Below the pieces are notes generated by a model, which had not been told where the DNA came from, did not search any database, and worked only from the letters and a program-made list of their open reading frames with translations. Both the position numbers and the translations under genes were made by a program. Below, in pieces: positions 14,810 through 43,827 of a DNA stretch of 64,000 bases. The DNA lies in the IMG/VR virus record IMGVR_UViG_3300027573_000779, positions 1 through 64,000 of that record; one strand, 5' to 3'. Each line of letters starts with the position of its first letter. Within the stretch, counting starts at the first letter, position 1.

Positions 14810-15574
14810 TCAACCAGTGATTTTAGAGCGCGAAGTTGAAAGATTTTGTAAAGCCTCCTGTTCAGAAAGCCCTTTTAATTTTTCATCAAGAACGTTTTTG
14901 CTCCCTTTTTTGTTCTTATCGTCATCCAATAAGGCTATTTCAAGGTCCGCAAACGATTGATTGAGTTTGATTTGAACACTTTCTAGGGCAGTTTCAATAC
15001 AAATCTTATCAAAAGTGTCCCCTTCAATTTCTCCTGCCGCTTCGTTCATAGCCGCCGCCGCACAAGCCATCTTCCATTTCTTTTCTGTGCGTTTGATTGT
15101 CTCCGCAAAGTCCTGAAGAGTTACTTGGGCATCCTGATACACCCCTTGCCGATGTTCAAGCAATTGTCTCATTTTGGCCAACCGTTCTTTATAAACATCA
15201 GCGTCTTCAAGCCCGTCCTTCACGTATTGTTTAACTTGGTCCGCAAAAGTTAAAACCTGTGCCGAAAACTTACTAATATTTTCTTTATATTGGGCGAGCG
15301 CGTCTTGTTTCTTTATATACTGATTTTGTAATGTTTCAACGGGGTTTTTAGCGGACTCAGCTTTTAAGGCTTTTATACGCCAGTTTGCCATCTTCATTGC
15401 AAAGTATGGCAGAAAATTGATAATTCCCCAAGATATCCCGCCAGCAACCAAAAGACCAAATAATCCTTGAATGCTTAAAAAAACAAATGGAGCTACAAAA
15501 ACTCCTAGCACCCCAAGACCAATTACCTTCACTAATAATTCTATCCGTTTTCGTTTTTGTTCTAGGTCAGTCAT
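14810..15574 (-). CDS. Two-TM protein with long coiled coil (PspA/IM30-like architecture)
   Basis: Two N-terminal TM helices followed by ~170 aa of heptad helix ending KKWKMACAAAAMNEAAG. Confidence 0.55.
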   Translation of the reverse strand: MTDLEQKRKRIELLVKVIGLGVLGVFVAPFVFLSIQGLFGLLVAGGISWGIINFLPYFAMKMANWRIKALKAESAKNPVETLQNQYIKKQDALAQYKENISKFSAQVLTFADQVKQYVKDGLEDADVYKERLAKMRQLLEHRQGVYQDAQVTLQDFAETIKRTEKKWKMACAAAAMNEAAGEIEGDTFDKICIETALESVQIKLNQSFADLEIALLDDDKNKKGSKNVLDEKLKGLSEQEALQNLSTSRSKITG

Positions 15575-15948
15575 ATGTTTTGTAAAGATTTATATTTAAG
15601 TCTAATCAGTTCATCTAACGCTTTGCTTTGAACAATGGTTCCAGTTTCCCATCTTTTAACGCTTGCTACGCCAACATGTAAAAAACGCGCAAATTCTATT
15701 TGGGATAAATCTAATGAATTTCGAATTGCCAAAATCTCTTTTCCTGTTAAGAGATTTTGTTTTAGTCTATAAGCATCTACCGTATTCTTTCTTAATTCGT
15801 CTGCTTGTTCAAAGGTCACAGTTTTATATCCACACATAGTACATTCTTCGGCAGACGTAACAACTTCAAACTTTTCCCCATGAAACTCTTGTAAAATTGG
15901 GGCCTTCACTGTTTTAAACTCAGTATTGTTACAATCTAAACATATCAT
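15571..15948 (-). CDS. MqsA-like antitoxin (zinc ribbon + XRE HTH)
   Basis: CLDC...HGEKFEV...CTMCG zinc ribbon; IRNSLDLSQIEFARFLHVGVASVKRWETG HTH. Confidence 0.8.
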   Translation of the reverse strand: MICLDCNNTEFKTVKAPILQEFHGEKFEVVTSAEECTMCGYKTVTFEQADELRKNTVDAYRLKQNLLTGKEILAIRNSLDLSQIEFARFLHVGVASVKRWETGTIVQSKALDELIRLKYKSLQNI

Positions 15949-15953
15949 AAAAT

Positions 15954-16045
15954 TGGCACGGAGTACAGGTAACGCTCCTGTATAACGGAATGATTACCGT
16001 ATGAGGGTTTGGAATCCTCTGCCTTACTTGTCGAGCCAACTCCGT
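15954..16045 (-). tRNA. tRNA with Trp anticodon (CCA) on a long-variable-arm (class II) body; A18, A54, G55, U58
   Basis: ACGGAGT/ACTCCGT acceptor, GAGGA-TTCCAAA-CCCTC anticodon arm, ACGG/CCGT variable arm, ACAGG-AGCGTTA-CCTGT T arm, GCCA. Confidence 0.85.
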
Positions 16046-16049
16046 GTTG

Positions 16050-16074
16050 GGGCGCACCATTGCAAGGTGCGCCC
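16050..16074. other. Perfect 9-bp GC-rich hairpin in the tRNA-Trp 5' leader
   Basis: GGGCGCACC-ATTGCAA-GGTGCGCCC. Confidence 0.6.
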
Positions 16075-16251
16075 TCAGCGCATCAGTTTTTAACTTAACT
16101 TATGATAAAAAGGTCTATAAAATACCTCTTATAGACAAGAGAACTATCAATTCACTCCCAATAGCAAGGATACCTTTTGAATGCCGAAAAAGGTTCTAAA
16201 CGTGTTGGATTTTTAATTTAAGGATAACGCACCCAACTAACCTAAATTAAC

Positions 16252-16497
16252 CTAAATTTTGGGTCTGCCGTAAACCGAAGGGCCTCCGGTGTCTTTTTGT
16301 TCAATTGCTAAAGACCCCTTGGAAACAAACTCTACTTGTTGTTCGTCAAAGAATTCAGCGCGAGCTAAAGTCCCGTCTTTTGCTAGTTTTTGTGGGGTAA
16401 TTCCAATATGAACACACCCATTAAGGTATTCTGTCCGACTGGAAAACACGCCCTTGAACCCGCTGATTTTATCCTTAACAATGTCACCTAGTTTCAT
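16252..16497 (-). CDS. Conserved-type phage hypothetical protein (start revised to MKLGDIVKD)
   Basis: KLGDIVKDKISGFKGV...RTEYLNGCV pattern; the longer upstream extension is low-complexity. Confidence 0.65.
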   Translation of the reverse strand: MKLGDIVKDKISGFKGVFSSRTEYLNGCVHIGITPQKLAKDGTLARAEFFDEQQVEFVSKGSLAIEQKDTGGPSVYGRPKI

Positions 16498-16625
16498 TTT
16501 GTTATTTGTTTTGTTTTTTTGTTTTGTCTGAAATTTACCCCAAAACACACCCTTAAAGCCCCGCATTTTCATTTGTTAGTTGTTTTTGCTCAAATTCGCC
16601 CCAAAAAAGCATAACAAGCCTTTTT

Positions 16626-16826
16626 GGGGGAAGACTCCTATTTACCTTACTCAACCCCTACTTCCGGCTCAGGGTCTTTCATCCGCCCTTCCCTGCTAGT
16701 CTTTCTATGTACGGGCAGAACACTAAGTATTTTAGTGAACTGTTGCGATACATCGCCTCACGGCTCGCTCCATCGTCATCCTACTCACACTCGGTAGAAG
16801 TATTTTCGTCGGATACTAGCAACCTC
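16626..16826 (-). ncRNA. Unnamed ~200-nt structured RNA with possible pseudoknot
   Basis: TGCTAGT/ACTAGCA, TTCTAC/GTAGGA, GCC-GTGA-GGC, CACTAA/TTAGTG, TCTGCCC/GGGCGGA, GGGAAG/CTTCCC; no ORF. Confidence 0.6.
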
Positions 16827-16835
16827 AATAGGATA

Positions 16836-17063
16836 TCAAACTTGTTTGTTTAAATTTTTAATAATAGCTCGAACAAGTCTAGGTTCCGCACGAACATATT
16901 GACAAGCCAAACATTCACAGGTCCAATCTTTTTTCTTGTGAAAAGCGTCAATAACATGCATTGTGCCAAGTACGTCTAAACCTACGTTACGAACTTTAGA
17001 TAAAGCTAGTTCTTCTTGTTGTTCTGGTGTCATAAAAAATGGAGCCAAAGATAGGATTTGCAC
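16836..17063 (-). CDS. Hypothetical protein
   Basis: ORF track; CECLAC motif; start may be at the internal MTPEQ. Confidence 0.55.
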   Translation of the reverse strand: MQILSLAPFFMTPEQQEELALSKVRNVGLDVLGTMHVIDAFHKKKDWTCECLACQYVRAEPRLVRAIIKNLNKQV

Positions 17064-17123
17064 CTACAAATGAGAATTCACAAAATTCTTCCTGTTCTAG
17101 TTGAGGCACTTCGGCAATAAAAC

Positions 17124-17199: not shown

Positions 17200-17215
17200 A
17201 TTGAAAATTCAAAAA

Positions 17216-17299
17216 GGGGTCAGGATACCAATCTGCCTTATTTCATTCGACAGTGACCCTCAAGCTTTCTAAAGGGTCTTCCAACCGGAACCCTGACCC
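17216..17299 (-). ncRNA. Three-way-junction RNA, copy A
   Basis: GGGTCAGG/CCTGACCC; GACCC-TTTAGAAAGCTTGA-GGGTC; CTGTC-GAATGAAATAA-GGCAG. Confidence 0.7.
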
Positions 17300-17301
17300 G
17301 A

Positions 17302-17375
17302 AAAGGACATTAACTGTCTTATTTCATTCAACAGCACCCCTCAGTTTCCAAAGGGGTTCGTTACGAATGTCCTTT
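17302..17375 (-). ncRNA. Three-way-junction RNA, copy B
   Basis: AAAGGACAT/ATGTCCTTT; ACCCC-TTTGGAAACTGA-GGGGT; CTGTT-GAATGAAATAA-GACAG. Confidence 0.7.
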
Positions 17376-17499
17376 AAAATTGAAGAGGGGCAACCTAACG
17401 TCATCAGATAACCCCAATCACTAACGTTGCGTTAATGAGAAGTAAATTAAAACAACCTTGGGATTTCACGAGCGTTCCAATGTCTATCCAAGGTTTACT

Positions 17500-18287
17500 A
17501 AGTCTGAGACTACAACTTAGATTACTAGTCTTTCCGAAGATTATCAAGGCTTTGCGAGCCTCTTTCCTCCGTTATCCTCATAAACCCTTTAATGGCATCT
17601 ATGAACCTAGCATGGCTGCATTTTTACAGGTTGCATTTCCTGCTACCCATCACTCTACTCGATGTTCACTTTCTGTCTAGCTTGCGGCCAGTTAAGGATT
17701 ATTAGTCCAACATGCAGCGAAACAATCAACTAAATCACCCCTTGCGAGGGCAATCCAGTCTCCATTACCTTGCGGCAGGAGAATTAAGCCACTTTCGAGT
17801 GACAGAGGAAACGTCTTTGCTTTTTATATCATAGAACGATATGTTGGGATTACACCAACGCATCTAACAGCGACGTGCGTTTCCTGTCGTTTCATATCCT
17901 TTTGGGATACAAAATGCGACACGCCGCTTGCCTTTCATCTTGCAGACTACTCAACCAGATTACTCGACTTTGGATAACTTTTTAAGGGTTATCCATTACC
18001 GTTTAACCTTGCTATTAAGCCCTTGCTTGCATGGCTTGAACTTAATAACTCCTCTTTGTCCTTAGCTGTCGCTGTTTGGCATGATAATATATTAGATTGC
18101 GAGTCTAATACCCCTACTCACCGATTGGCTCTGTAGGTTTAACTATCCAGCTTCCAGTTACCTCACGTTATCGTAAGGTCTCAGGACTGAGTTTGCCTGA
18201 ATATCCCTTTGGAAAGGGCGCGAGGTTAGTTAGCACCTTCGCCTTTCGCCGTCTTGCGACGGGTTATTTAACGTGGTCAGGCCCACA
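17500..18287 (-). ncRNA. GOLLD-like giant ornate ncRNA (~790 nt)
   Basis: ORF-free, many GNRA-capped hairpins (GTC-GCAA-GAC, CCCTC-GCAA-GGGG, CACTC-GAAA-GTG), 5' loop GCCTGA complementary to TCAGGC, 3' GAGTAG...GATAATC...GAAAGACTAG...GTAGTCTCAG as recalled for GOLLD; located within a tRNA cluster. Confidence 0.7.
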
Positions 18288-18305
18288 AAATCTACAAATT
18301 AAAAT

Positions 18306-18410
18306 ACCTAAGTTCAGGTCGCTCAATATACGGTATGACCGATTGAAACAGTTAGCTATGCTGCTCCAAGTTGCCGGAATGACCCGATTTTATGCCCTCA
18401 ACGCTTAGGT
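18306..18410 (-). ncRNA. Closed ~105-nt structured domain directly 3' of tRNA-Leu
   Basis: ACCTAAG/CTTAGGT closing stem, TTCCGG-CAAC-TTGGAG hairpin; starts 3 nt after the CCA. Confidence 0.4.
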
Positions 18411-18413
18411 AAA

Positions 18414-19413: not shown

Positions 19414-19911
19414 TTACAATTCTTTGCCATCCAACCCCACAAGAGTTGAAACCCTCTTCCAACCATACGTTTTCATCTGTTCTTCATTCATGGTGTCAAG
19501 GCTGGCTTCGGGACTAATCACAAAAATGGAAATATTCTTCTCTCGTATGGTTTTTAGATATTTTTTGACAATAATTTCAAGAGAATAAGCTGATTGTTGA
19601 GCGTATTGAGGGTCGATTCTAAGAACGACCAAGCTGTTAGGTTCAATCTCATCTATCTTGATTATCTTATCTAACTTTAGACCAATTTCAACGTCTGTCT
19701 CTTGTTTAAGCCAACGAATAAATTTATCTTGAACATCCTGTGAGACCCCTTGCCCCTTCATTAATTCTTCGACAGAAGCATATCTTCTCCCGGTAGGTTT
19801 AATTTCTTCTGGATTTTTTAAAGGATGATTATCGTTCAGAGGATTTTCACATCCTACATCGTCATCTTCTGTTGTTCGGCCCATATAAATTCTTTCTTTA
19901 TTATGCTGCAA
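19414..19911 (-). CDS. Hypothetical protein
   Basis: ORF track; follows the PurA-like gene. Confidence 0.6.
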   Translation of the reverse strand: MQHNKERIYMGRTTEDDDVGCENPLNDNHPLKNPEEIKPTGRRYASVEELMKGQGVSQDVQDKFIRWLKQETDVEIGLKLDKIIKIDEIEPNSLVVLRIDPQYAQQSAYSLEIIVKKYLKTIREKNISIFVISPEASLDTMNEEQMKTYGWKRVSTLVGLDGKEL

Positions 19912-21241
19912 CCATCTCTTTTTTCAAGTTTAAAAAAGACATCTTATCGTTTGCCATTTCCCCATAAGATTTAATACCTATAGGGACATTTAACATATCA
20001 GTAAGAATATTAGGAATTGCTTCCCCTTCTACTTTTTCCGATTCACAATTAACTTTACCGAGAGTTTTACCTAGTTCTTCCTGATTAACTAAAAATGACA
20101 TATGGGGTTTTTTAAGTTCCCAAAGTTTTCCATTTAAATTATAGCCAGTGTTAATATACCATGGATTGATTTCATTAATTCTATCACAATGAGAAACCGC
20201 CAAATAATCTACCCCACCGTTAACTTCTAGGGCATATTTTAAAAGGGGAATATCTAACATGCCCGTTCTAAATCTTCCTTGCCATGGACCAGTTGTATTA
20301 GCTGTGTCTTGTAAATTCCAAGGCATTTCAGTTGGAAAAGGTCCTGCGCCGTGTCTGGTGGCATAAATTCTAGTTACACCAATCTCAACAATGTTAGATT
20401 CTAATAACCCCAAGCCAGCTTCATTTAAAACCTTATATACGTTTTCTGTGGTTGTATTACTCCAAGTTGTGTGGGGGTGAAAACCCCATTTTTCATCTAG
20501 TAATATGCCTTGAGCGCCCTCAAAAACAGGATTATTGGAACCTTTTAGCAATTCTGAAACCTGTTGAGCGTCTATGATGTTAATTTTTTTGCTTAATTCC
20601 TGATATTCTTTAGCTATACGGTCAGTAAAACGCAAATCTCTGAAAAACTTAGCATGAGAACCTATAAAATTATAGAAATCAACCCCTTCCCTGTCTAGGC
20701 GCGAAATCATCGCCCTAAAGGTAAGCCAAAGCTTTTCATGGGTAATATCATAATTCTTAAGGTCTTTAACCCGTAAAACATTATCTCTCTTTAAACTGTC
20801 TAAAACTGTTTCTCCAATCCCCACTCCACACGAGCCATGACGATTATTGTTTCTACTCTCTTCTAACATCCTGTTAGCCGCAACATGAAATGGGGTAGTA
20901 ACCAAAGCTCGTTCATCTACATAAATTGATTCAAAGTTTCCCCCTTTGCGCCAAGTATTTGCACTTAAAACCTCTTCTTCTTTTATTAAGGATAAGGGGT
21001 TAAATAAAACGTGCTTAGTGAGTAATGTTTTAACGTTCCGATTGACTAAAGTTCCACTGCCAAACTGAGCAAAAACGTGAGAGTCGCCACTTGAAGTAAC
21101 AACTCTGTGGGCACATTGAGCGCCGCCATTATATCTGATAACTAAATCAGAATTGTTTTGACGGACAAGAAAGTCAACAACACTTCCTTTTGTTTCGTCG
21201 CCGTGTTGCAGACCCACAACTATGAAAACATTTTTGTCCAT
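19901..21241 (-). CDS. Divergent adenylosuccinate synthetase-like protein (start revised to MDKNV)
   Basis: GDETKG, RYNGGAQCAH, FEGAQGILLD, TRHGAGPFPTE, GRFRTG. Confidence 0.9.
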   Translation of the reverse strand: MDKNVFIVVGLQHGDETKGSVVDFLVRQNNSDLVIRYNGGAQCAHRVVTSSGDSHVFAQFGSGTLVNRNVKTLLTKHVLFNPLSLIKEEEVLSANTWRKGGNFESIYVDERALVTTPFHVAANRMLEESRNNNRHGSCGVGIGETVLDSLKRDNVLRVKDLKNYDITHEKLWLTFRAMISRLDREGVDFYNFIGSHAKFFRDLRFTDRIAKEYQELSKKINIIDAQQVSELLKGSNNPVFEGAQGILLDEKWGFHPHTTWSNTTTENVYKVLNEAGLGLLESNIVEIGVTRIYATRHGAGPFPTEMPWNLQDTANTTGPWQGRFRTGMLDIPLLKYALEVNGGVDYLAVSHCDRINEINPWYINTGYNLNGKLWELKKPHMSFLVNQEELGKTLGKVNCESEKVEGEAIPNILTDMLNVPIGIKSYGEMANDKMSFLNLKKEMVAA

Positions 21242-21310
21242 AAATTTGAAAAAAAGGGAGAGGAAAGGCAACCATAACCATTCCTCTCCCGGTGTGCGAA
21301 CCCGAACCAA

Positions 21311-28560: not shown

Positions 28561-28775
28561 ATTTCACCTTTCCAACAAATCTTATTTGCGCGTTCAGCAG
28601 CTTTCTTTTTTGAAATATCTTCTTGTATTTTTTTCATACACTTTTTCGCATCTTCTTCCCTTCTCAACGTGCAAAACCCATAGGTCCACGTGTCAAAATC
28701 GTGCCACATTCCAAACTCACGAAACTGAGGAAGATAAACTTCCCGATAAACGTCGTAAAAGATTCTTACTTTCAT
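28557..28775 (-). CDS. Hypothetical protein
   Basis: ORF track. Confidence 0.55.
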   Translation of the reverse strand: MKVRIFYDVYREVYLPQFREFGMWHDFDTWTYGFCTLRREEDAKKCMKKIQEDISKKKAAERANKICWKGEI

Positions 28776-29869
28776 ACCGCGACCTCTCCTTTTATAGCTG
28801 GATGTGGGTCGTAGCCCTCTAACCTAATATCCTCATACTTGAAATCAAAAAGGTCTCGCTTATCGGGGTTGAGCCATAAGCGGGGTAAAGGTTTAGGCTC
28901 GCGGCTTAGTTGCTCATTTACCTGCTCTTTATGATTCTCATAAATATGCAAATCTCCATAGGTATGAATGAAAGTTCCCGGCTGCATATTAACACAATGG
29001 GCGACCATTGCTAATAGGAGACTATAAGATGTGATGTTGAATGGCACGCCTAGGAAAGTATCACAGCTTCTTTGATAGAGTAGAAGATTAAGACGGCGAC
29101 TTGGAACACCCATTCTATTTAAAGCCTCTTCTTGCTCTTGAATAGTATGGTAACCTACTTGGCCCCACGAGCCTTCTTTTTGTTTGTAAGTGGGGTTTTT
29201 AAAAGATAGCTCAAATCTTTCGTCGTGTGTTAGTTCCTCAGTATGAAACTGAAACAAGCAATGGCACGGCGGCAGCGCACATTTCTCGACCCAATAAGGA
29301 TGCCATGCACTTACTATCATGCGGCGGTCATCGGGGTTAGTCTTGAGTTTGTCGAGGACTTTCTGGAGTTGGTCTACCTCTCCCTTCAGTCCTTGTTCAA
29401 CACAATTCTCATAAAAATATGGAAATGCTCGCCACATCCCACCATAAGTTCCTTCGCCTAATTCTCCATGCTCGGCAGCAAATTTTTCGTCATTCTTTAT
29501 TCTCTCTAAGAACTTATCCATAGATAAAGCTCTTCCGTGTTCGTCGCCATCCCATTTAAAAATACCAGTAAGAGTTGGAAACTTTTCAGCATACCTCTTA
29601 TAGGGCCAAGAATTCCAAATATGAACGTCATTATCCACCAAATACTTAATGTTGGTATCTCCCCGTATGAACCATAACAGTTCGTGAACAACGCCTTTAA
29701 ACCACACCTTCTTAGTTGTTAATATAGGAAACTCCTCAAAACTAACAGGAAACTTCGCCTGCTCCCCAAACACTCCTACAGTATTTATCCCCGTCCGGTT
29801 CTTCTTAACCGTTCCCTTTTCCAGAATAGTATTTAAAAGTCTAAAATATTCCTTGTCAGTATTATTCAT
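28772..29869 (-). CDS. thyA: Thymidylate synthase
   Basis: ALPPCHCLFQF, YQRSCDTFLGVPFN, YGDLHIYENH. Confidence 0.96.
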   Translation of the reverse strand: MNNTDKEYFRLLNTILEKGTVKKNRTGINTVGVFGEQAKFPVSFEEFPILTTKKVWFKGVVHELLWFIRGDTNIKYLVDNDVHIWNSWPYKRYAEKFPTLTGIFKWDGDEHGRALSMDKFLERIKNDEKFAAEHGELGEGTYGGMWRAFPYFYENCVEQGLKGEVDQLQKVLDKLKTNPDDRRMIVSAWHPYWVEKCALPPCHCLFQFHTEELTHDERFELSFKNPTYKQKEGSWGQVGYHTIQEQEEALNRMGVPSRRLNLLLYQRSCDTFLGVPFNITSYSLLLAMVAHCVNMQPGTFIHTYGDLHIYENHKEQVNEQLSREPKPLPRLWLNPDKRDLFDFKYEDIRLEGYDPHPAIKGEVAV

Positions 29870-40572: not shown

Positions 40573-43500
40573 ATGACAAAAACTTTAACTCAGGACGCTA
40601 CCTCTATTAATTTTGAACAGGAAATTTCAAACTATATTTTTGTTAGTCGTTACAGTAGATTTAATGAAAAGTTAGGGAGAAGAGAAACATGGGATGAGGC
40701 AGTTAGTAGGTTGGAAACCATGCACTTAAAGAAATTTAATTATCTTTCAAAGGAGGATAAGGATGAAATTAAGTGGGCGTTTGATATGGTTAGAGCAAAA
40801 CGGGTCGTTCCTTCGATGCGAAGTTTACAGTTCGGAGGCAAAGCAATTGAAGCTCATCAAGCTAGAATTTTCAACTGTAGTGTTCGGCATGTAGATTCTA
40901 TTCGTTCTTTTGCTGAGATAATGTATCTTTTGCTTTGTGGATGCGGGGTAGGTATTGGAGTAAGCAGGTTTTTTCTTCGTCGCTTGCCTGATTTGGTAGA
41001 TGCTAAAGATAAAACTGGAACAGTTGTCACTTATAGTATTGAGGATAGTATGGAGGGGTGGGCTGATTCAGTTGAAGCTCTTTTGATGTGTTATTTTAAG
41101 AATACTCCCTATACAGGTAGGAAGATTTGTTTTGATTATTCTAAAATTAGAAAAAAAGGAACGCCTCTTAAGACTGGAGGAGGTAAAGCTCCGGGTTACA
41201 AAGGCTTAAAAAACACTCATCTGAAAATTAAAGCTCTTCTTGACCATATTATTGAAAATAAAAAACAACTTCGACTTAAATCTATTGATGCTTATGATAT
41301 TTTAATGCATTGTGCCGACGCCGTTCTTTCAGGGGGAATTAGACGCTCAGCTACTTCGGTTATTTTTGATGAAGACGACGAAGATATGATGAATGCTAAA
41401 ACCTCATTTAAAGTAACTAAAAAAAGTGGGTTTGAAGAAGATGGGACCTCTGTTGTTGGTGGAAAGACCTATCAGTTATACAACGGCAAAGTTACTGTTG
41501 ATGGCCTAACCTATTATGTCACTTTGAAAGAATATGAATACGAACAGCTTAAGAAAAGCGGAACAATTAGCTGGATGCATATTCAACCCCAAAGAGCAAG
41601 GTCTAACAATAGCATTTTACTTCTAAGGGATAAAATAACGTATGAGAAGTTCAATGAGATGGTACAAAGAACCCGTCAATGGGGAGAACCGGGATTTGTA
41701 TTTGCTAATCATCCTTGGACCCTACTGAACCCCTGTTTTGAGATAGGGTTTATTCCTATTACCGACGATGGAGTTTGCGGCACCCAGTTTTGTAACCTCA
41801 CTTCTATCAACGGGAAAAAGATTACCTCTTTTCAAGACTTTAAAGAATGTGGCAAGGCAGCTTCATTAATAGGAACACTCCAAGCGGCTTATACTTACTT
41901 CTCTTATCTTTCACAAGCAGCACAGGAAGTAAGCGAGCAAGAAAGTTTATTGGGCGTAAGCCTAACAGGATGGATGGATTCTCCGTCCGTTCTCTTAAAT
42001 GAGGAAAATCAAAGAAAGGTAAGTTCTCTCGTGGTAGAAACAAACAGGATTTGGGCTAAGAAAATTGGCGTAAATCAGGCAGCAAGAACAACATGCGTAA
42101 AACCCGAGGGTTGCGTTTCAGCCGATACTTTAATTTTATCTAATGAAGGTATTTTATATTTAGATGAGGTTGGGGATATTAATGGTAAAGAATGGCAAAA
42201 TCATCAAATAAATATTAGTTCTGCGTTAGATATTAAAGCATCAGATAAATTTTTTGTTAATGGACGCAAAAACGTATTAAAAATTAAATTTAACAGTGGA
42301 TTTGAATTTACTGGAACCCTCAATCATAAAGTTCAAGTTGTCAATAGTCACGGAATAGAATGGAAACAGCTTGATAATTTACAAAAAGGGGATGCTGTTG
42401 TTTACAGAATTGGTGGATACGATAGTGCTTTTGGGTCTTATCAAAAGCTCAAGAAGCCCTCATTTGTATTACATAAAAACTCTCATAACACACAAGAAAT
42501 AATATGCCCCCCTATCTTAGACGAAGAACTTGCTTGGTTCCTCGGTCTTTATTTAGGAGACGGTTCGAATCACGAGAAAGGGATACGTATTTCAGGCAAC
42601 CGAAAAGATGTGTCAGATTTAGATAAAGCGAATAAGATAGTTAATAAATATTTTGGCATATCTTTTACTACTAGTAATTATCAAAAAGATGAATTAGATA
42701 ATAGAATTCAATATTATTTCAATTCAATACAATTGCTTAAGTTTTTGGAAGAGAATGGCCTTTTGAAACCTAAATCTCAAGACATTGAAATCCCTAAGAT
42801 TGTTCGTCAGTCTCCTAAATCTGTAATTGAATTTTATTTAGATGGGTATGCAGCAGCAGATGGATGTGATGAGAGTCGAACTAGGAGTTACCATACTGTT
42901 TCTGAGAAGATGGCAAAGCAACTACCAATAGTTTTAAGAGCTATAGGAAAAGATTGTAAAGTTCGCAAATATAAGCCTTCCAAAGGGTCGTTCGGCACAA
43001 ATGAAAAATATTGGATACAAGAACGAAAGAGCTTAAATGGTAATATAAACAGGAATAGCCGTTTAGATAAAAAAATATACAATATATTAAAGGCAAGCGG
43101 CTACAGTAGCCATTTATATGATGTGGTTGACAATGTTGTTTATGGGGCGAATGAGCCAACCTATGATATTTCGGTTCCAGACGAACATGCCTATATTGCT
43201 AATAGCTTTGTTTCCCACAACACATCATCTTTAGTCCTAGGCACTGCCTCAGGCATTCACCCACATCATTCTAGAAGATATTTCAGAAGAGTTCAATGTA
43301 ACACAGAAGACAATGTGTATAGACACTTTAAAAAGACCAATCCCAAACTTTGTGAGCCTTCAGTATGGTCCGCCAATAAAACAGACGATGTAATTACTTT
43401 TCCAGTCACGGTTTCTGATGAAGCAATGGTTAAAAGTGACCTTTCTGCTATTGAACATTTGGAAATTATCAAATCTGTTCAAAAAAATTGGGTAATTAAC

Positions 43501-43827
43501 GGAACAACCGAAGCAAACAAGAAGGATTTGACTCATAATGTCTCATGCACCGTTATCGTTAAAGATGACGAGTGGGACAAGGTAATCGATTATCTTTATC
43601 TAAACAGAGAGTATTTTGCTGCCGTTTCTCTTTTGCCAGAAACTGGAGATAAAGACTTTCCTCAAGCTCCAATGGAGGCCGTTATAACTCCAGAAGATGA
43701 AGAACATTGGGAGGAAATTATTAGTAATTTTAAGTCCGTAGATTATACCAAACTTAAAGAAGAAGAAGATAATACTGCCCTTTCCCAAGAAGGCTCTTGT
43801 TATGGTGGAGCCTGTCAAATAATATAG
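40573..43827 (+). CDS. nrdJ: Class II (B12-dependent) ribonucleotide reductase containing an intein
   Basis: RSLQFGG, FNCS, NPCFEI, FCNL, TTCVKPEG|T, C-terminal CYGGAC. Confidence 0.9.
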   Translation: MTKTLTQDATSINFEQEISNYIFVSRYSRFNEKLGRRETWDEAVSRLETMHLKKFNYLSKEDKDEIKWAFDMVRAKRVVPSMRSLQFGGKAIEAHQARIFNCSVRHVDSIRSFAEIMYLLLCGCGVGIGVSRFFLRRLPDLVDAKDKTGTVVTYSIEDSMEGWADSVEALLMCYFKNTPYTGRKICFDYSKIRKKGTPLKTGGGKAPGYKGLKNTHLKIKALLDHIIENKKQLRLKSIDAYDILMHCADAVLSGGIRRSATSVIFDEDDEDMMNAKTSFKVTKKSGFEEDGTSVVGGKTYQLYNGKVTVDGLTYYVTLKEYEYEQLKKSGTISWMHIQPQRARSNNSILLLRDKITYEKFNEMVQRTRQWGEPGFVFANHPWTLLNPCFEIGFIPITDDGVCGTQFCNLTSINGKKITSFQDFKECGKAASLIGTLQAAYTYFSYLSQAAQEVSEQESLLGVSLTGWMDSPSVLLNEENQRKVSSLVVETNRIWAKKIGVNQAARTTCVKPEGCVSADTLILSNEGILYLDEVGDINGKEWQNHQINISSALDIKASDKFFVNGRKNVLKIKFNSGFEFTGTLNHKVQVVNSHGIEWKQLDNLQKGDAVVYRIGGYDSAFGSYQKLKKPSFVLHKNSHNTQEIICPPILDEELAWFLGLYLGDGSNHEKGIRISGNRKDVSDLDKANKIVNKYFGISFTTSNYQKDELDNRIQYYFNSIQLLKFLEENGLLKPKSQDIEIPKIVRQSPKSVIEFYLDGYAAADGCDESRTRSYHTVSEKMAKQLPIVLRAIGKDCKVRKYKPSKGSFGTNEKYWIQERKSLNGNINRNSRLDKKIYNILKASGYSSHLYDVVDNVVYGANEPTYDISVPDEHAYIANSFVSHNTSSLVLGTASGIHPHHSRRYFRRVQCNTEDNVYRHFKKTNPKLCEPSVWSANKTDDVITFPVTVSDEAMVKSDLSAIEHLEIIKSVQKNWVINGTTEANKKDLTHNVSCTVIVKDDEWDKVIDYLYLNREYFAAVSLLPETGDKDFPQAPMEAVITPEDEEHWEEIISNFKSVDYTKLKEEEDNTALSQEGSCYGGACQII
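42112..43221 (+). mobile_element. 370-aa intein with LAGLIDADG homing endonuclease
   Basis: Starts CVSADT after KPEG, ends VSHN before Thr; LAWFLGLYLGDGS and FYLDGYAAADG. Confidence 0.95.

What the first reader, a model, noticed from the sequence alone, without database searches (positions are those of the whole stretch)
16626..16826. Unnamed ~200-nt multi-helix RNA with a candidate pseudoknot
Seen: at least six stems, including TCTGCCC/GGGCGGA crossing the TGCTAGT/ACTAGCA helix; purine-rich junctions; GC-richer than flanks; no ORF. I cannot assign a family.
Basis: seen in the sequence. Interest (0 to 1): 0.6.

Follow-up and report, generated by a model that had tools for sequence, protein, structure and literature searches.

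The report
Orphan GC-rich noncoding block beside phage GOLLD
A 205-base, GC-rich, non-coding stretch in the tRNA/GOLLD RNA cluster of an uncultivated 209-kb freshwater phage can fold into several stems and may be a new small structured RNA, but no relative exists in any database searched, so its structure cannot be verified.

Summary
The stems are real and the block is non-coding, but the structured-RNA reading is unproven.

**What is there**
- The stems lie on the minus strand. A 10-bp closing stem bounds the element at 16633-16837, and a 14-bp hairpin follows at 16596-16631.
- Codon usage is negative in all six frames.
- GC is 0.47-0.52 against 0.37 for the genome.
- It sits on the coding strand of a 2-kb RNA island: tRNAs, a 194-bit GOLLD RNA and a tandem structured module.

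**Why support is only marginal**
- The core fold has z = -1.56, the same as the neighbouring tRNA.
- Long helices number 5, against 2.0 ± 1.3 in shuffles (P ≈ 0.05).

**What could not be tested**
- No Rfam family matches, even at E ≤ 10.
- No homologue turned up in phage, plasmid or E. coli collections, IMG/VR and JGI pattern scans, 41 related or GOLLD-bearing viral records, or 156 bacterial genomes.
- Copies of the phage from other samples are 100% identical, so covariation cannot be tested.
- No RNA-seq run holds the sequence.

**Ruled out**
- 23S rRNA fragment, tRNA/tmRNA, part of GOLLD, a plus-strand gene, and a leader conserved with the downstream gene family.

Best reading is an orphan structured RNA element, at about 45% confidence.

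The parts
16633..16837 (-). Candidate structured RNA core (205 nt), GC 0.47, non-coding in all six frames
16827..16837 (-). P1 5' strand (GAU.AUCCUAU). It overlaps the UGA stop codon (16838-16836) of the upstream gene.
   Evidence: base-pair probabilities 0.72-1.0
16633..16642 (-). P1 3' strand (AUAGGAGUC)
16815..16822 (-). It can instead pair with AGUAA at 16651-16647.
16693..16700 (-).
16777..16814 (-). Hairpin H1 (AUCC.AC....AUACUU-CUACC-GAGUGU..GU.GGAU)
   Evidence: bpp 0.6-0.96
16746..16775 (-). Hairpin H2 with a GCC-GUGA-GGC tip (GNRA tetraloop)
16717..16741 (-). Hairpin H3 (CACUAA-AAUAC-UUAGUG core, bpp over 0.86)
16713..16719 (-). Candidate pseudoknot helix B, 5' strand UCUGCCC
   Evidence: duplex -11.3 kcal/mol
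16682..16688 (-). Candidate pseudoknot helix B, 3' strand GGGCGGA
16643..16681 (-). Purine-rich 3' segment (UGAAAGACCCUGAGCCGGAAGUAGGGGUUGAGUAAGGUA). It can form an ACCCU/AGGGGU hairpin, and its GGAAGUA is complementary to UACUUCU in H1.
16596..16631 (-). Strong 14-bp hairpin directly 3' of the core. It has no canonical U-tract.
   Evidence: bpp about 1.0
16521..16606 (-). Two copies of UUUUGGGGYRAAUUUSAG..AAAAC (16606-16582 and 16545-21), 61 nt apart, in the leader of the downstream gene
16836..17033 (-). Upstream gene P0001 (65 aa, no relatives, gene-like codon usage, unstructured mRNA with z +1.1)
16252..16497 (-). Downstream gene P0002 (81 aa; phrog_16275; large unnamed family of small beta-barrel-like domains)

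Best explanation
The block at 16633-16837 (minus strand) is a transcribed, structured, non-coding RNA element. It is specific to this lineage of an uncultivated 209-kb groundwater and freshwater-sediment phage.

It forms the last unit of a 2-kb RNA island, in this order: tRNA-Gly, tRNA-Leu, GOLLD, a tandem three-way-junction module, tRNA-Gly, a tRNA-Thr-like gene, then a 65-aa gene.

- **Shown:** non-coding status, GC excess, strand-biased foldability, and the context.
- **Inferred, most likely mechanism:**
  - It is transcribed with the island on the minus strand.
  - It folds into a P1-closed multi-helix domain, H1-H3 plus a purine-rich 3' segment that may pair back as a pseudoknot.
  - It is stabilised or delimited at its 3' end by the 16631-16596 hairpin.
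  - It accumulates as a stable RNA acting in trans during infection, like the co-located GOLLD RNA, whose own function is also unknown.
For: - **Non-coding.** All six frames are negative by codon usage, while the neighbours P0001, P0002 and the MqsA-like gene score +0.26 to +0.35.
  - No protein family or homologue exists for any frame.
- **A large gap in a dense genome.** The gap is 338 nt in a genome about 93% covered by ORFs.
- **GC excess.** GC is 0.47-0.52 against 0.373 for the genome. That is comparable only to the tRNA and GOLLD gaps.
- **RNA-island context.** GOLLD scores 194 bits at 17501-17929, and the tRNAs lie on the same strand.
  - The gap between them folds at z = -4.8 and holds two module copies with 8 compensatory pairs.
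- **Strand asymmetry.** The core fold z-score is -1.56 on the minus strand and -0.78 on the plus strand; with the 3' hairpin the values are -2.74 and -1.78.
  - The model has 6 G.U pairs, which would be A.C mismatches on the plus strand.
- **A well-delimited block.** The P1 closing stem has pairing probability of 0.9 or more and delimits the GC-rich block exactly, starting at the upstream stop codon.
- **Contrast with the upstream mRNA.** The adjacent coding region is unstructured, z +1.1.
- **Excess of long helices.** P = 0.046.
Against: - **No homologue in any collection searched**, so there is no covariation evidence.
- **No natural variation.** Three other environmental copies are 100% identical.
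- **No RNA-seq run holds the sequence**, so transcription is unproven.
- **The core z-score is unimpressive.** 23 of 300 shuffles fold as well.
- **No recognisable promoter, and no canonical terminator after the hairpin**.
- **The pseudoknot is not favoured by the energy model**.
Confidence: 0.45

Rival explanations
1. It is an intergenic spacer, or decayed or foreign DNA, with no RNA-level function. The stems are those any 200-nt GC-enriched sequence offers. The GC excess reflects a horizontally acquired or degenerating fragment.
For: - The core fold is not significantly more stable than shuffles (z -1.56).
- A WC 7-mer helix is expected about once per 200 nt, and shuffles give 2.0 helices of 7 bp or more.
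- There is no homologue and no conservation evidence at all.
- About 45 other windows in the genome reach 50% GC.
Against: - Phage genomes rarely keep 340 nt of useless DNA, and this one is about 93% covered by ORFs.
- No protein similarity exists in any frame.
- The position, strand and GC match the neighbouring true RNA genes.
- P1 frames the GC-rich block exactly.
- The helix count is in the upper 5% of shuffles.
Confidence: 0.3
2. It is a cis-acting leader, riboswitch-like or protein-responsive, controlling the downstream gene P0002. The P1-closed domain would be the sensor. The 16631-16596 hairpin would be the expression platform. It competes with an alternative pairing of AGCC...GGGG (16669-16655) with CCCC...GGCU (16630-16617).
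For: - The layout fits: a closed multi-helix domain, then a strong hairpin, then a gene on the same strand.
- Complementary segments allow an alternative to the hairpin (read directly from the sequence).
- Two direct repeats lie in the remaining leader.
Against: - The hairpin lacks a U-tract and lies about 100 nt before the start codon.
- It sequesters no ribosome-binding site, and the genome shows no SD use.
- No riboswitch family matches.
- P0002 homologues in other phages and metagenomes are packed tightly against their upstream genes, with no such leader.
Confidence: 0.15
3. It is a DNA-level element: a replication origin, operator cluster or recombination site whose inverted repeats act in double-stranded or single-stranded DNA.
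For: - Inverted repeats of 7-10 bp bound the block.
- Direct repeats lie next to it.
- An MqsA-like HTH regulator is encoded 0.7 kb downstream.
Against: - Six of 51 model pairs are G.U, which are mismatches in DNA and on the other strand.
- There are no iteron arrays or AT-rich unwinding region inside the block. It is the GC-rich part.
- No other copy exists in the genome.
Confidence: 0.07
4. It is a diverged fragment or mimic of 23S rRNA domain I. Collinear short blocks such as GAAAA-N7-ACCGAG, AGUAG, GCCCGUACA, GGGCGG and AAGG.UAAAUA are shared with E. coli 23S nucleotides 200-440.
For: A gap-tolerant local alignment to E. coli 23S nt 151-600 scored 104.6, against 84.8 ± 7.4 for shuffles (1 of 300 as good).
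Against: - The target region was chosen after the fact.
- An ordinary local alignment to the whole rrn operon is no better than shuffles.
- The Rfam LSU model gives no match on the phage at E ≤ 10.
- An HMM of 85 diverse bacterial 23S domain-I segments gives no hit on the genome or on the isolated candidate, even with all filters off.
Confidence: 0.02

Closest known systems
GOLLD RNA (Rfam RF02032) and ROOL RNA, the large ornate phage RNAs found near tRNA islands
   Same: - Phage-encoded, non-coding and GC-enriched.
- On the same strand as GOLLD and within 0.7 kb of a bona fide copy.
- In a tRNA island, the context the literature describes for GOLLD and ROOL (bioRxiv 10.1101/2024.12.08.627333).
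- Function unknown.
   Different: - About 205 nt, not 580-830 nt.
- No sequence or structure match to either family.
- Separated from GOLLD by two tRNAs and a protein gene.
- Absent from 39 other GOLLD-bearing viral records.
Stable small RNAs encoded in the T4 tRNA gene cluster (species 1 and 2 RNAs); comparison from general knowledge, not tested
   Same: Small stable RNAs of unknown function, co-located and probably co-transcribed with phage tRNA genes.
   Different: - No sequence relation was tested or expected.
- The T4 RNAs are about 120-140 nt and are processed like tRNAs.
- The candidate shows no tRNA-like features.
Riboswitch or leader aptamers with a P1-closed multi-helix junction and pseudoknot (for example the SAM-I, lysine and cobalamin classes)
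   Same: - A closing P1, a multi-way junction and a possible loop-tail pseudoknot.
- A following hairpin, with a downstream gene on the same strand.
   Different: - No family match at E ≤ 10.
- No canonical terminator or RBS sequestration.
- The association with the downstream gene family is not conserved.

Membership tests
Any Rfam 15 family (4227 covariance models, including riboswitches, ribozymes, RNase P, tmRNA, SRP, 6S, group I/II introns, ROOL, raiA, OLE, HEARO) | Covariance-model score at or above the family gathering threshold, or at least E ≤ 10 | tested here: not met
   - Gathering scan of the whole window.
- E ≤ 10 scans of 701 nt and of 221 nt gave no hit on the candidate.
GOLLD RNA (RF02032) | Lies within the GOLLD model match, or contiguous with it as its 5' or 3' domain | tested here: not met
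   - The GOLLD match is 17929-17501 (194 bits, model 1-416 complete).
- The candidate lies 660 nt further 3', beyond two tRNAs and a coding gene.
GOLLD-associated accessory element | Recurs beside GOLLD in other phages | tested here: not met
   Model R1 and nhmmer found nothing in 55 GOLLD-bearing loci or in 39 whole records.
Group I intron | Rfam Intron_gpI match, flanking exons forming one ORF, and a P3-P8-P7 arrangement | tested here: not met
   - No Rfam match.
- The flanking ORFs are separate complete genes with their own start and stop.
- No P8 fits between the crossing strands, which are only 4 nt apart (16692-16689).
Self-cleaving ribozymes (hammerhead, twister, twister-sister, pistol, hatchet, HDV-like, glmS) | Family covariance-model match and catalytic-core consensus | tested here: not met
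   No match at E ≤ 10. Cleavage activity itself cannot be tested with these tools.
tRNA / tmRNA / tRNA with intron | ARAGORN or Rfam tRNA/tmRNA call | tested here: not met
   (including the intron and low-threshold modes) call only the neighbouring tRNAs.
23S rRNA fragment (LSU domain I) | Significant match to an LSU covariance model or a domain-I profile | tested here: not met
   - RF02541: no match at E ≤ 10.
- The 85-sequence domain-I HMM gave no hit, even with --max.
Tandem three-way-junction module at 17217-17375 (this genome) | Match to covariance model R2, built from the two copies | tested here: not met
   R2 hits only the two copies. A shared GAAGACCCU...AGGG hairpin word is seen by eye only.
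Structured ncRNA in general (conserved secondary structure) | Compensatory base changes in homologues | not testable with these tools
   No homologue was found, and four other contigs and three runs are 100% identical.
Protein-coding sequence | Gene-like codon usage in some frame, or protein homologues | tested here: not met
   - All six frames are negative.
- No PHROG, Pfam, tblastn or word-search hit.

The most novel reading that the evidence does not exclude
The block is the founding member of a new class of about 205-nt pseudoknotted phage RNA. It works together with GOLLD, the adjacent tandem module and the phage tRNAs as a multi-RNA 'RNA island', for example as cargo, partner or regulator of the GOLLD nanocage, or as a decoy for a host RNA-binding factor.
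Probability: 0.2. Interest if true: 0.6.

Novelty: new variant of a known kind. Interest (0 to 1): 0.3.

Why it matters
GOLLD and ROOL are abundant phage RNAs that form RNA-only nanocages, and their function is unknown. Their genomic company is one of the few clues to what they do.

If this block and the neighbouring tandem module are real RNAs, this phage carries a compact island of at least three unrelated structured RNAs plus tRNAs. That would point to a coordinated RNA-based host-takeover function and would supply new partners to test with GOLLD.

If it is not real, it is just an unusually GC-rich spacer. As it stands it is an unverifiable singleton from an uncultivated virus, and that limits its value.

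Tried and rejected
**1. 23S rRNA domain-I fragment or mimic: rejected**
- Collinear short blocks and a gap-tolerant alignment looked suggestive.
- The LSU covariance model and an independent 85-sequence HMM gave nothing.

**2. Accessory element of GOLLD: rejected**
- Absent from 55 loci and 39 whole GOLLD-bearing IMG/VR records.

**3. Relative of the tandem module at 17217-17375: rejected**
- Model R2 does not hit it.

**4. Leader conserved with the P0002 family: rejected**
- Homologues in Brevundimonas and Pseudomonas phages and in metagenome contigs have no upstream gap.

**5. Group I intron, tRNA with intron, tmRNA: rejected**
-.

**6. Plus-strand small gene, or TGA read-through extension of P0001**
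- The P0001 frame continues with four TGA and no TAA or TAG for 62 codons (read).
- That frame scores -0.61 by codon usage.
- Large conserved genes are intact under code 11, so the genome shows no recoding. No other code was applied.

**7. Homologue hunts that found nothing**
- blastn against phages, plasmids and E. coli.
- nhmmer and blastn against the phage's own genome.
- Three IMG/VR pattern scans. The one CM hit, L063, lies inside a methyltransferase-like ORF and is chance.
- One JGI metagenome pattern scan, which found only the phage's own record.
- Relatives by DNA polymerase at 44-46% identity.
- 151 genomes of one phylum plus 5 others; two hits at E 0.02-0.08 per genome are at chance level for 151 genomes.

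**8. Natural variation and expression**
- All other copies are identical, and no RNA runs were available.

**9. Bacteroidota-type -7 promoter motif TAnnTTTG**
- Not enriched.

Full report
**Setting**

The window is the first 64 kb of a 208,933-bp IMG/VR virus record, 37.3% GC and CheckV-complete. The same phage occurs in groundwater and freshwater-sediment metagenomes.

Genes around the finding all lie on the minus strand. Read 5' to 3' on that strand, the neighbourhood is as follows:

| Coordinates | Feature |
|---|---|
| 18570-18496 | tRNA-Gly(GCC) |
| 18490-18414 | tRNA-Leu(UAA) |
| 18413-17930 | 484-nt non-coding stretch |
| 17929-17501 | GOLLD RNA: full-length match to the 416-position Rfam model RF02032, 194 bits |
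| 17500-17200 | 300-nt non-coding stretch |
| 17199-17124 | tRNA-Gly(UCC) |
| 17115-17043 | tRNA-Thr-like gene |
| 17033-16836 | 65-aa gene P0001 |
| about 16837-16596 | the finding |
| 16497-16252 | 81-aa gene P0002 (phrog_16275) |

**The observation**

- A partition-function fold gives a very stable closing stem, 16837-16827 / 16642-16633, with pairing probability 0.72-1.0. It begins inside the UGA stop codon of P0001.
- Three internal hairpins follow: 16814-16777, 16775-16746 with a GUGA tetraloop, and 16741-16717.
- Directly 3' of the core lies a 14-bp hairpin at 16631-16596.
  - UUGCUAGU/ACUAGCAG, 8 bp;
  - UCUGCCC/GGGCGGA, 7 bp, duplex energy -11.3 kcal/mol.
- In the nested ensemble the first of these loses to a competing UUGCU/AGUAA helix, which has probability over 0.9.
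- My crude estimate puts the pseudoknotted model about 5 kcal/mol above the nested minimum.
- Two more 7-bp long-range complementarities exist. One is UACUUCU in H1 with GGAAGUA in the 3' segment. The pairing scheme is therefore ambiguous.

**Is it more than chance?**

The non-structural features are solid.

- GC is 0.51 in the core against 0.36-0.40 in the flanks.
- Only 0.4-0.9% of 150-nt windows in the genome reach this level.
- Among non-coding gaps it ranks with the tRNA and GOLLD gaps.
- A codon-usage log-odds model was trained on 74 long ORFs of this genome.
  - It scores P0001 at +0.35, P0002 at +0.26 and the MqsA-like gene at +0.27.
  - Every frame of the candidate is negative, the best being -0.29.
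  - GOLLD and the 17200-17500 gap are also negative in every frame.
- The 98-codon stop-free frame on the plus strand has no family, no tblastn match in phages and no word-search relative.
- Unpaired positions are 70% purine.

The structural statistics are weak.

- The 207-nt core folds at z = -1.56 on the minus strand (23 of 300 dinucleotide shuffles are as good) and at -0.78 on the plus strand.
- With the 3' hairpin the values are -2.74 and -1.78.
- For scale, the neighbouring tRNA-Gly gives -1.58, the GOLLD match -2.8, and the two flanking non-coding stretches -4.3 and -4.8.
- The P0001 coding region gives +1.1.
- Long helices are modestly over-represented: 5 against 2.0 ± 1.3, P = 0.046.

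**Search for a family**

Rfam 15 has nothing at gathering thresholds. It also has nothing at E ≤ 10 on 701 nt or on 221 nt. ARAGORN finds no tRNA, intron-bearing tRNA or tmRNA in the block.

**Search for homologues**

- **Direct DNA searches** found nothing in 50,697 phage records, PLSDB plasmids or E. coli genomes. There is no paralogue in the phage itself.
- **Flanking proteins.**
  - P0001 and P0002 have no close relatives in IMG/VR or in the 5.8-billion-protein word search.
  - The contigs that carry the identical P0002 protein are 100% identical over 0.8-2.6 kb.
  - Contigs from three sequencing runs also show no difference.
- **Covariance model R1.** I built it from the single sequence with P1, helix A, H1-H3 and a small hairpin. 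It found nothing in any of these:
  - 55 GOLLD-bearing IMG/VR loci fetched with a GOLLD 3'-end pattern;
  - the 39 whole viral records behind those loci;
  - two records whose DNA polymerase is 44-46% identical, the closest relatives available;
  - loci from three sequence-pattern scans of IMG/VR and one of JGI metagenomes;
  - loci encoding P0002 homologues;
  - 156 bacterial genomes, where two hits at per-genome E of 0.02-0.08 among 151 genomes are at chance level.
- **The one CM hit** with E = 0.0014, in L063, contained the seeded 16-mer by construction and lies inside a 188-aa ORF.
- **Expression.** No RNA-seq run holds the sequence.

Covariation and expression therefore remain untestable with present data.

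**A lead that failed**

By eye, and by a gap-tolerant alignment, the candidate shares collinear short blocks with E. coli 23S rRNA nucleotides 200-440. The score was 104.6 against 84.8 ± 7.4 for shuffles.

I tested this independently and it did not hold.

- The Rfam LSU model finds nothing in the phage at E ≤ 10.
- An HMM built from 85 diverse bacterial 23S domain-I segments finds neither the phage genome nor the isolated candidate, even with all filters off.

I treat the resemblance as chance between purine-rich motifs.

**What it most likely is**

The non-coding status, the GC excess in an AT-rich and densely coded phage genome, the strand, the exact framing of the GC-rich block by P1, and its place at the end of an RNA island make a transcribed structured RNA the single most likely reading. 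I put it at about 0.45.

Within that reading I favour a stable trans-acting RNA processed from the island transcript over a cis-acting leader of P0002.

- The hairpin after the block is not a canonical terminator.
- It lies 100 nt from the start codon.
- P0002 belongs to a very large unnamed family: 3,368 representative clusters, mostly tandem two-domain proteins of about 160 aa. Members in other phages and metagenomes have no upstream gap.

An inert spacer or decayed foreign fragment remains a serious rival at about 0.3, because nothing structural has been shown beyond marginal statistics. A DNA-level element is less likely, because the model needs six G.U pairs.

**Comparison with known systems**

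The closest known kind is the set of phage RNAs of unknown function found at tRNA islands (GOLLD, ROOL). The candidate fails every membership test for those and for every other family tried. If it is real, it is a new, small and so far singleton class.

Noticed in passing
window 17217-17375, minus strand (whole gap 17200-17500): Two tandem copies of a 74-83-nt three-way-junction module: M1 at 17375-17302 and M2 at 17299-17217.
- Column identity is 79%, and 8 of 25 pairs are changed on both sides between the copies.
- The hairpin loop GAAUGAAAUAAG is invariant.
- M2's outer stem is followed by a U-tract, like a terminator.
- The gap folds at z = -4.8 on the minus strand against -1.4 on the plus strand.
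- There is no Rfam family at E ≤ 10, and no other copy in this genome or in 41 other viral records.

This is better supported as a real structured RNA than the finding itself.
   Followed up: partly
window 17501-17929 (-) and 17930-18413 (-): A bona fide GOLLD RNA: RF02032, 194 bits, E 3e-53, model 1-416 complete. A 484-nt non-coding stretch lies 5' of it and folds at z = -4.3. This is probably the variable GOLLD 5' domain. tRNA-Leu and tRNA-Gly lie directly upstream.
   Followed up: partly
window 17043-17115 (-): A tRNA-like gene. Rfam scores it 43.7 bits, and ARAGORN calls it tRNA-Thr(UGU) only at a lowered threshold. It ends 10 nt before the P0001 start codon.
   Followed up: partly
window 16521-16606 (-): Two copies of UUUUGGGGYRAAUUUSAG..AAAAC, 61 nt apart, upstream of P0002. 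The first overlaps the 3' strand of the 16631-16596 hairpin. The stretch between them re-encodes a GFKGVF peptide that also occurs in P0002, so it may be a partial duplication of the gene's 5' end.
   Followed up: no
window 15949-16251: Another GC-rich non-coding gap, with a peak of 0.55, lies between P0002 and the MqsA-like gene. It has very strong hairpins and folds at z -2.5 on the minus strand and -4.0 on the plus strand.
   Followed up: no
window 15571-15948 (-): A 125-aa protein matches the MqsA antitoxin / HTH_3 family (Pfam E 3e-10). No obvious MqsR-like toxin gene is adjacent.
   Followed up: no
window 19901-21310 (-): A 469-aa adenylosuccinate-synthetase homologue matches phrog_1211 (E 9e-78), the PHROG labelled as the PurZ-type enzyme of phages with modified adenine. 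Whether this phage makes 2-aminoadenine DNA was not examined.
   Followed up: no
window 40573-43827 (+) and 28772-29869 (-): A class II ribonucleotide reductase carries an intein (Intein_splicing, residues 532-883). A thymidylate synthase of 365 aa covers the 266-position Pfam model end to end, so it has about 100 extra residues inserted.
   Followed up: no
G000 115243-131649 (+), outside the window: A single 5,468-codon ORF. It was not characterised.
   Followed up: no
G000 about 182.2-185.5 kb (-), outside the window: Many repeats of AAGTTTGGGGCCAAGTTTGG-like units. Whether they are coding was not checked.
   Followed up: no
whole genome: No Shine-Dalgarno enrichment upstream of 118 long ORFs. 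The upstream regions are A/T-rich, a pattern known from Bacteroidota hosts, so this is only a hint at the host. The Bacteroidota -7 motif TAnnTTTG is not enriched.
   Followed up: partly
P0002 family (window 16252-16497): P0002 belongs to a very large unnamed protein family: 3,368 representative clusters at E < 0.001. Most members are tandem two-domain proteins of about 155-170 aa. There is no Pfam or NCBIfam model, apart from one faint YccV-like hit.
   Followed up: partly
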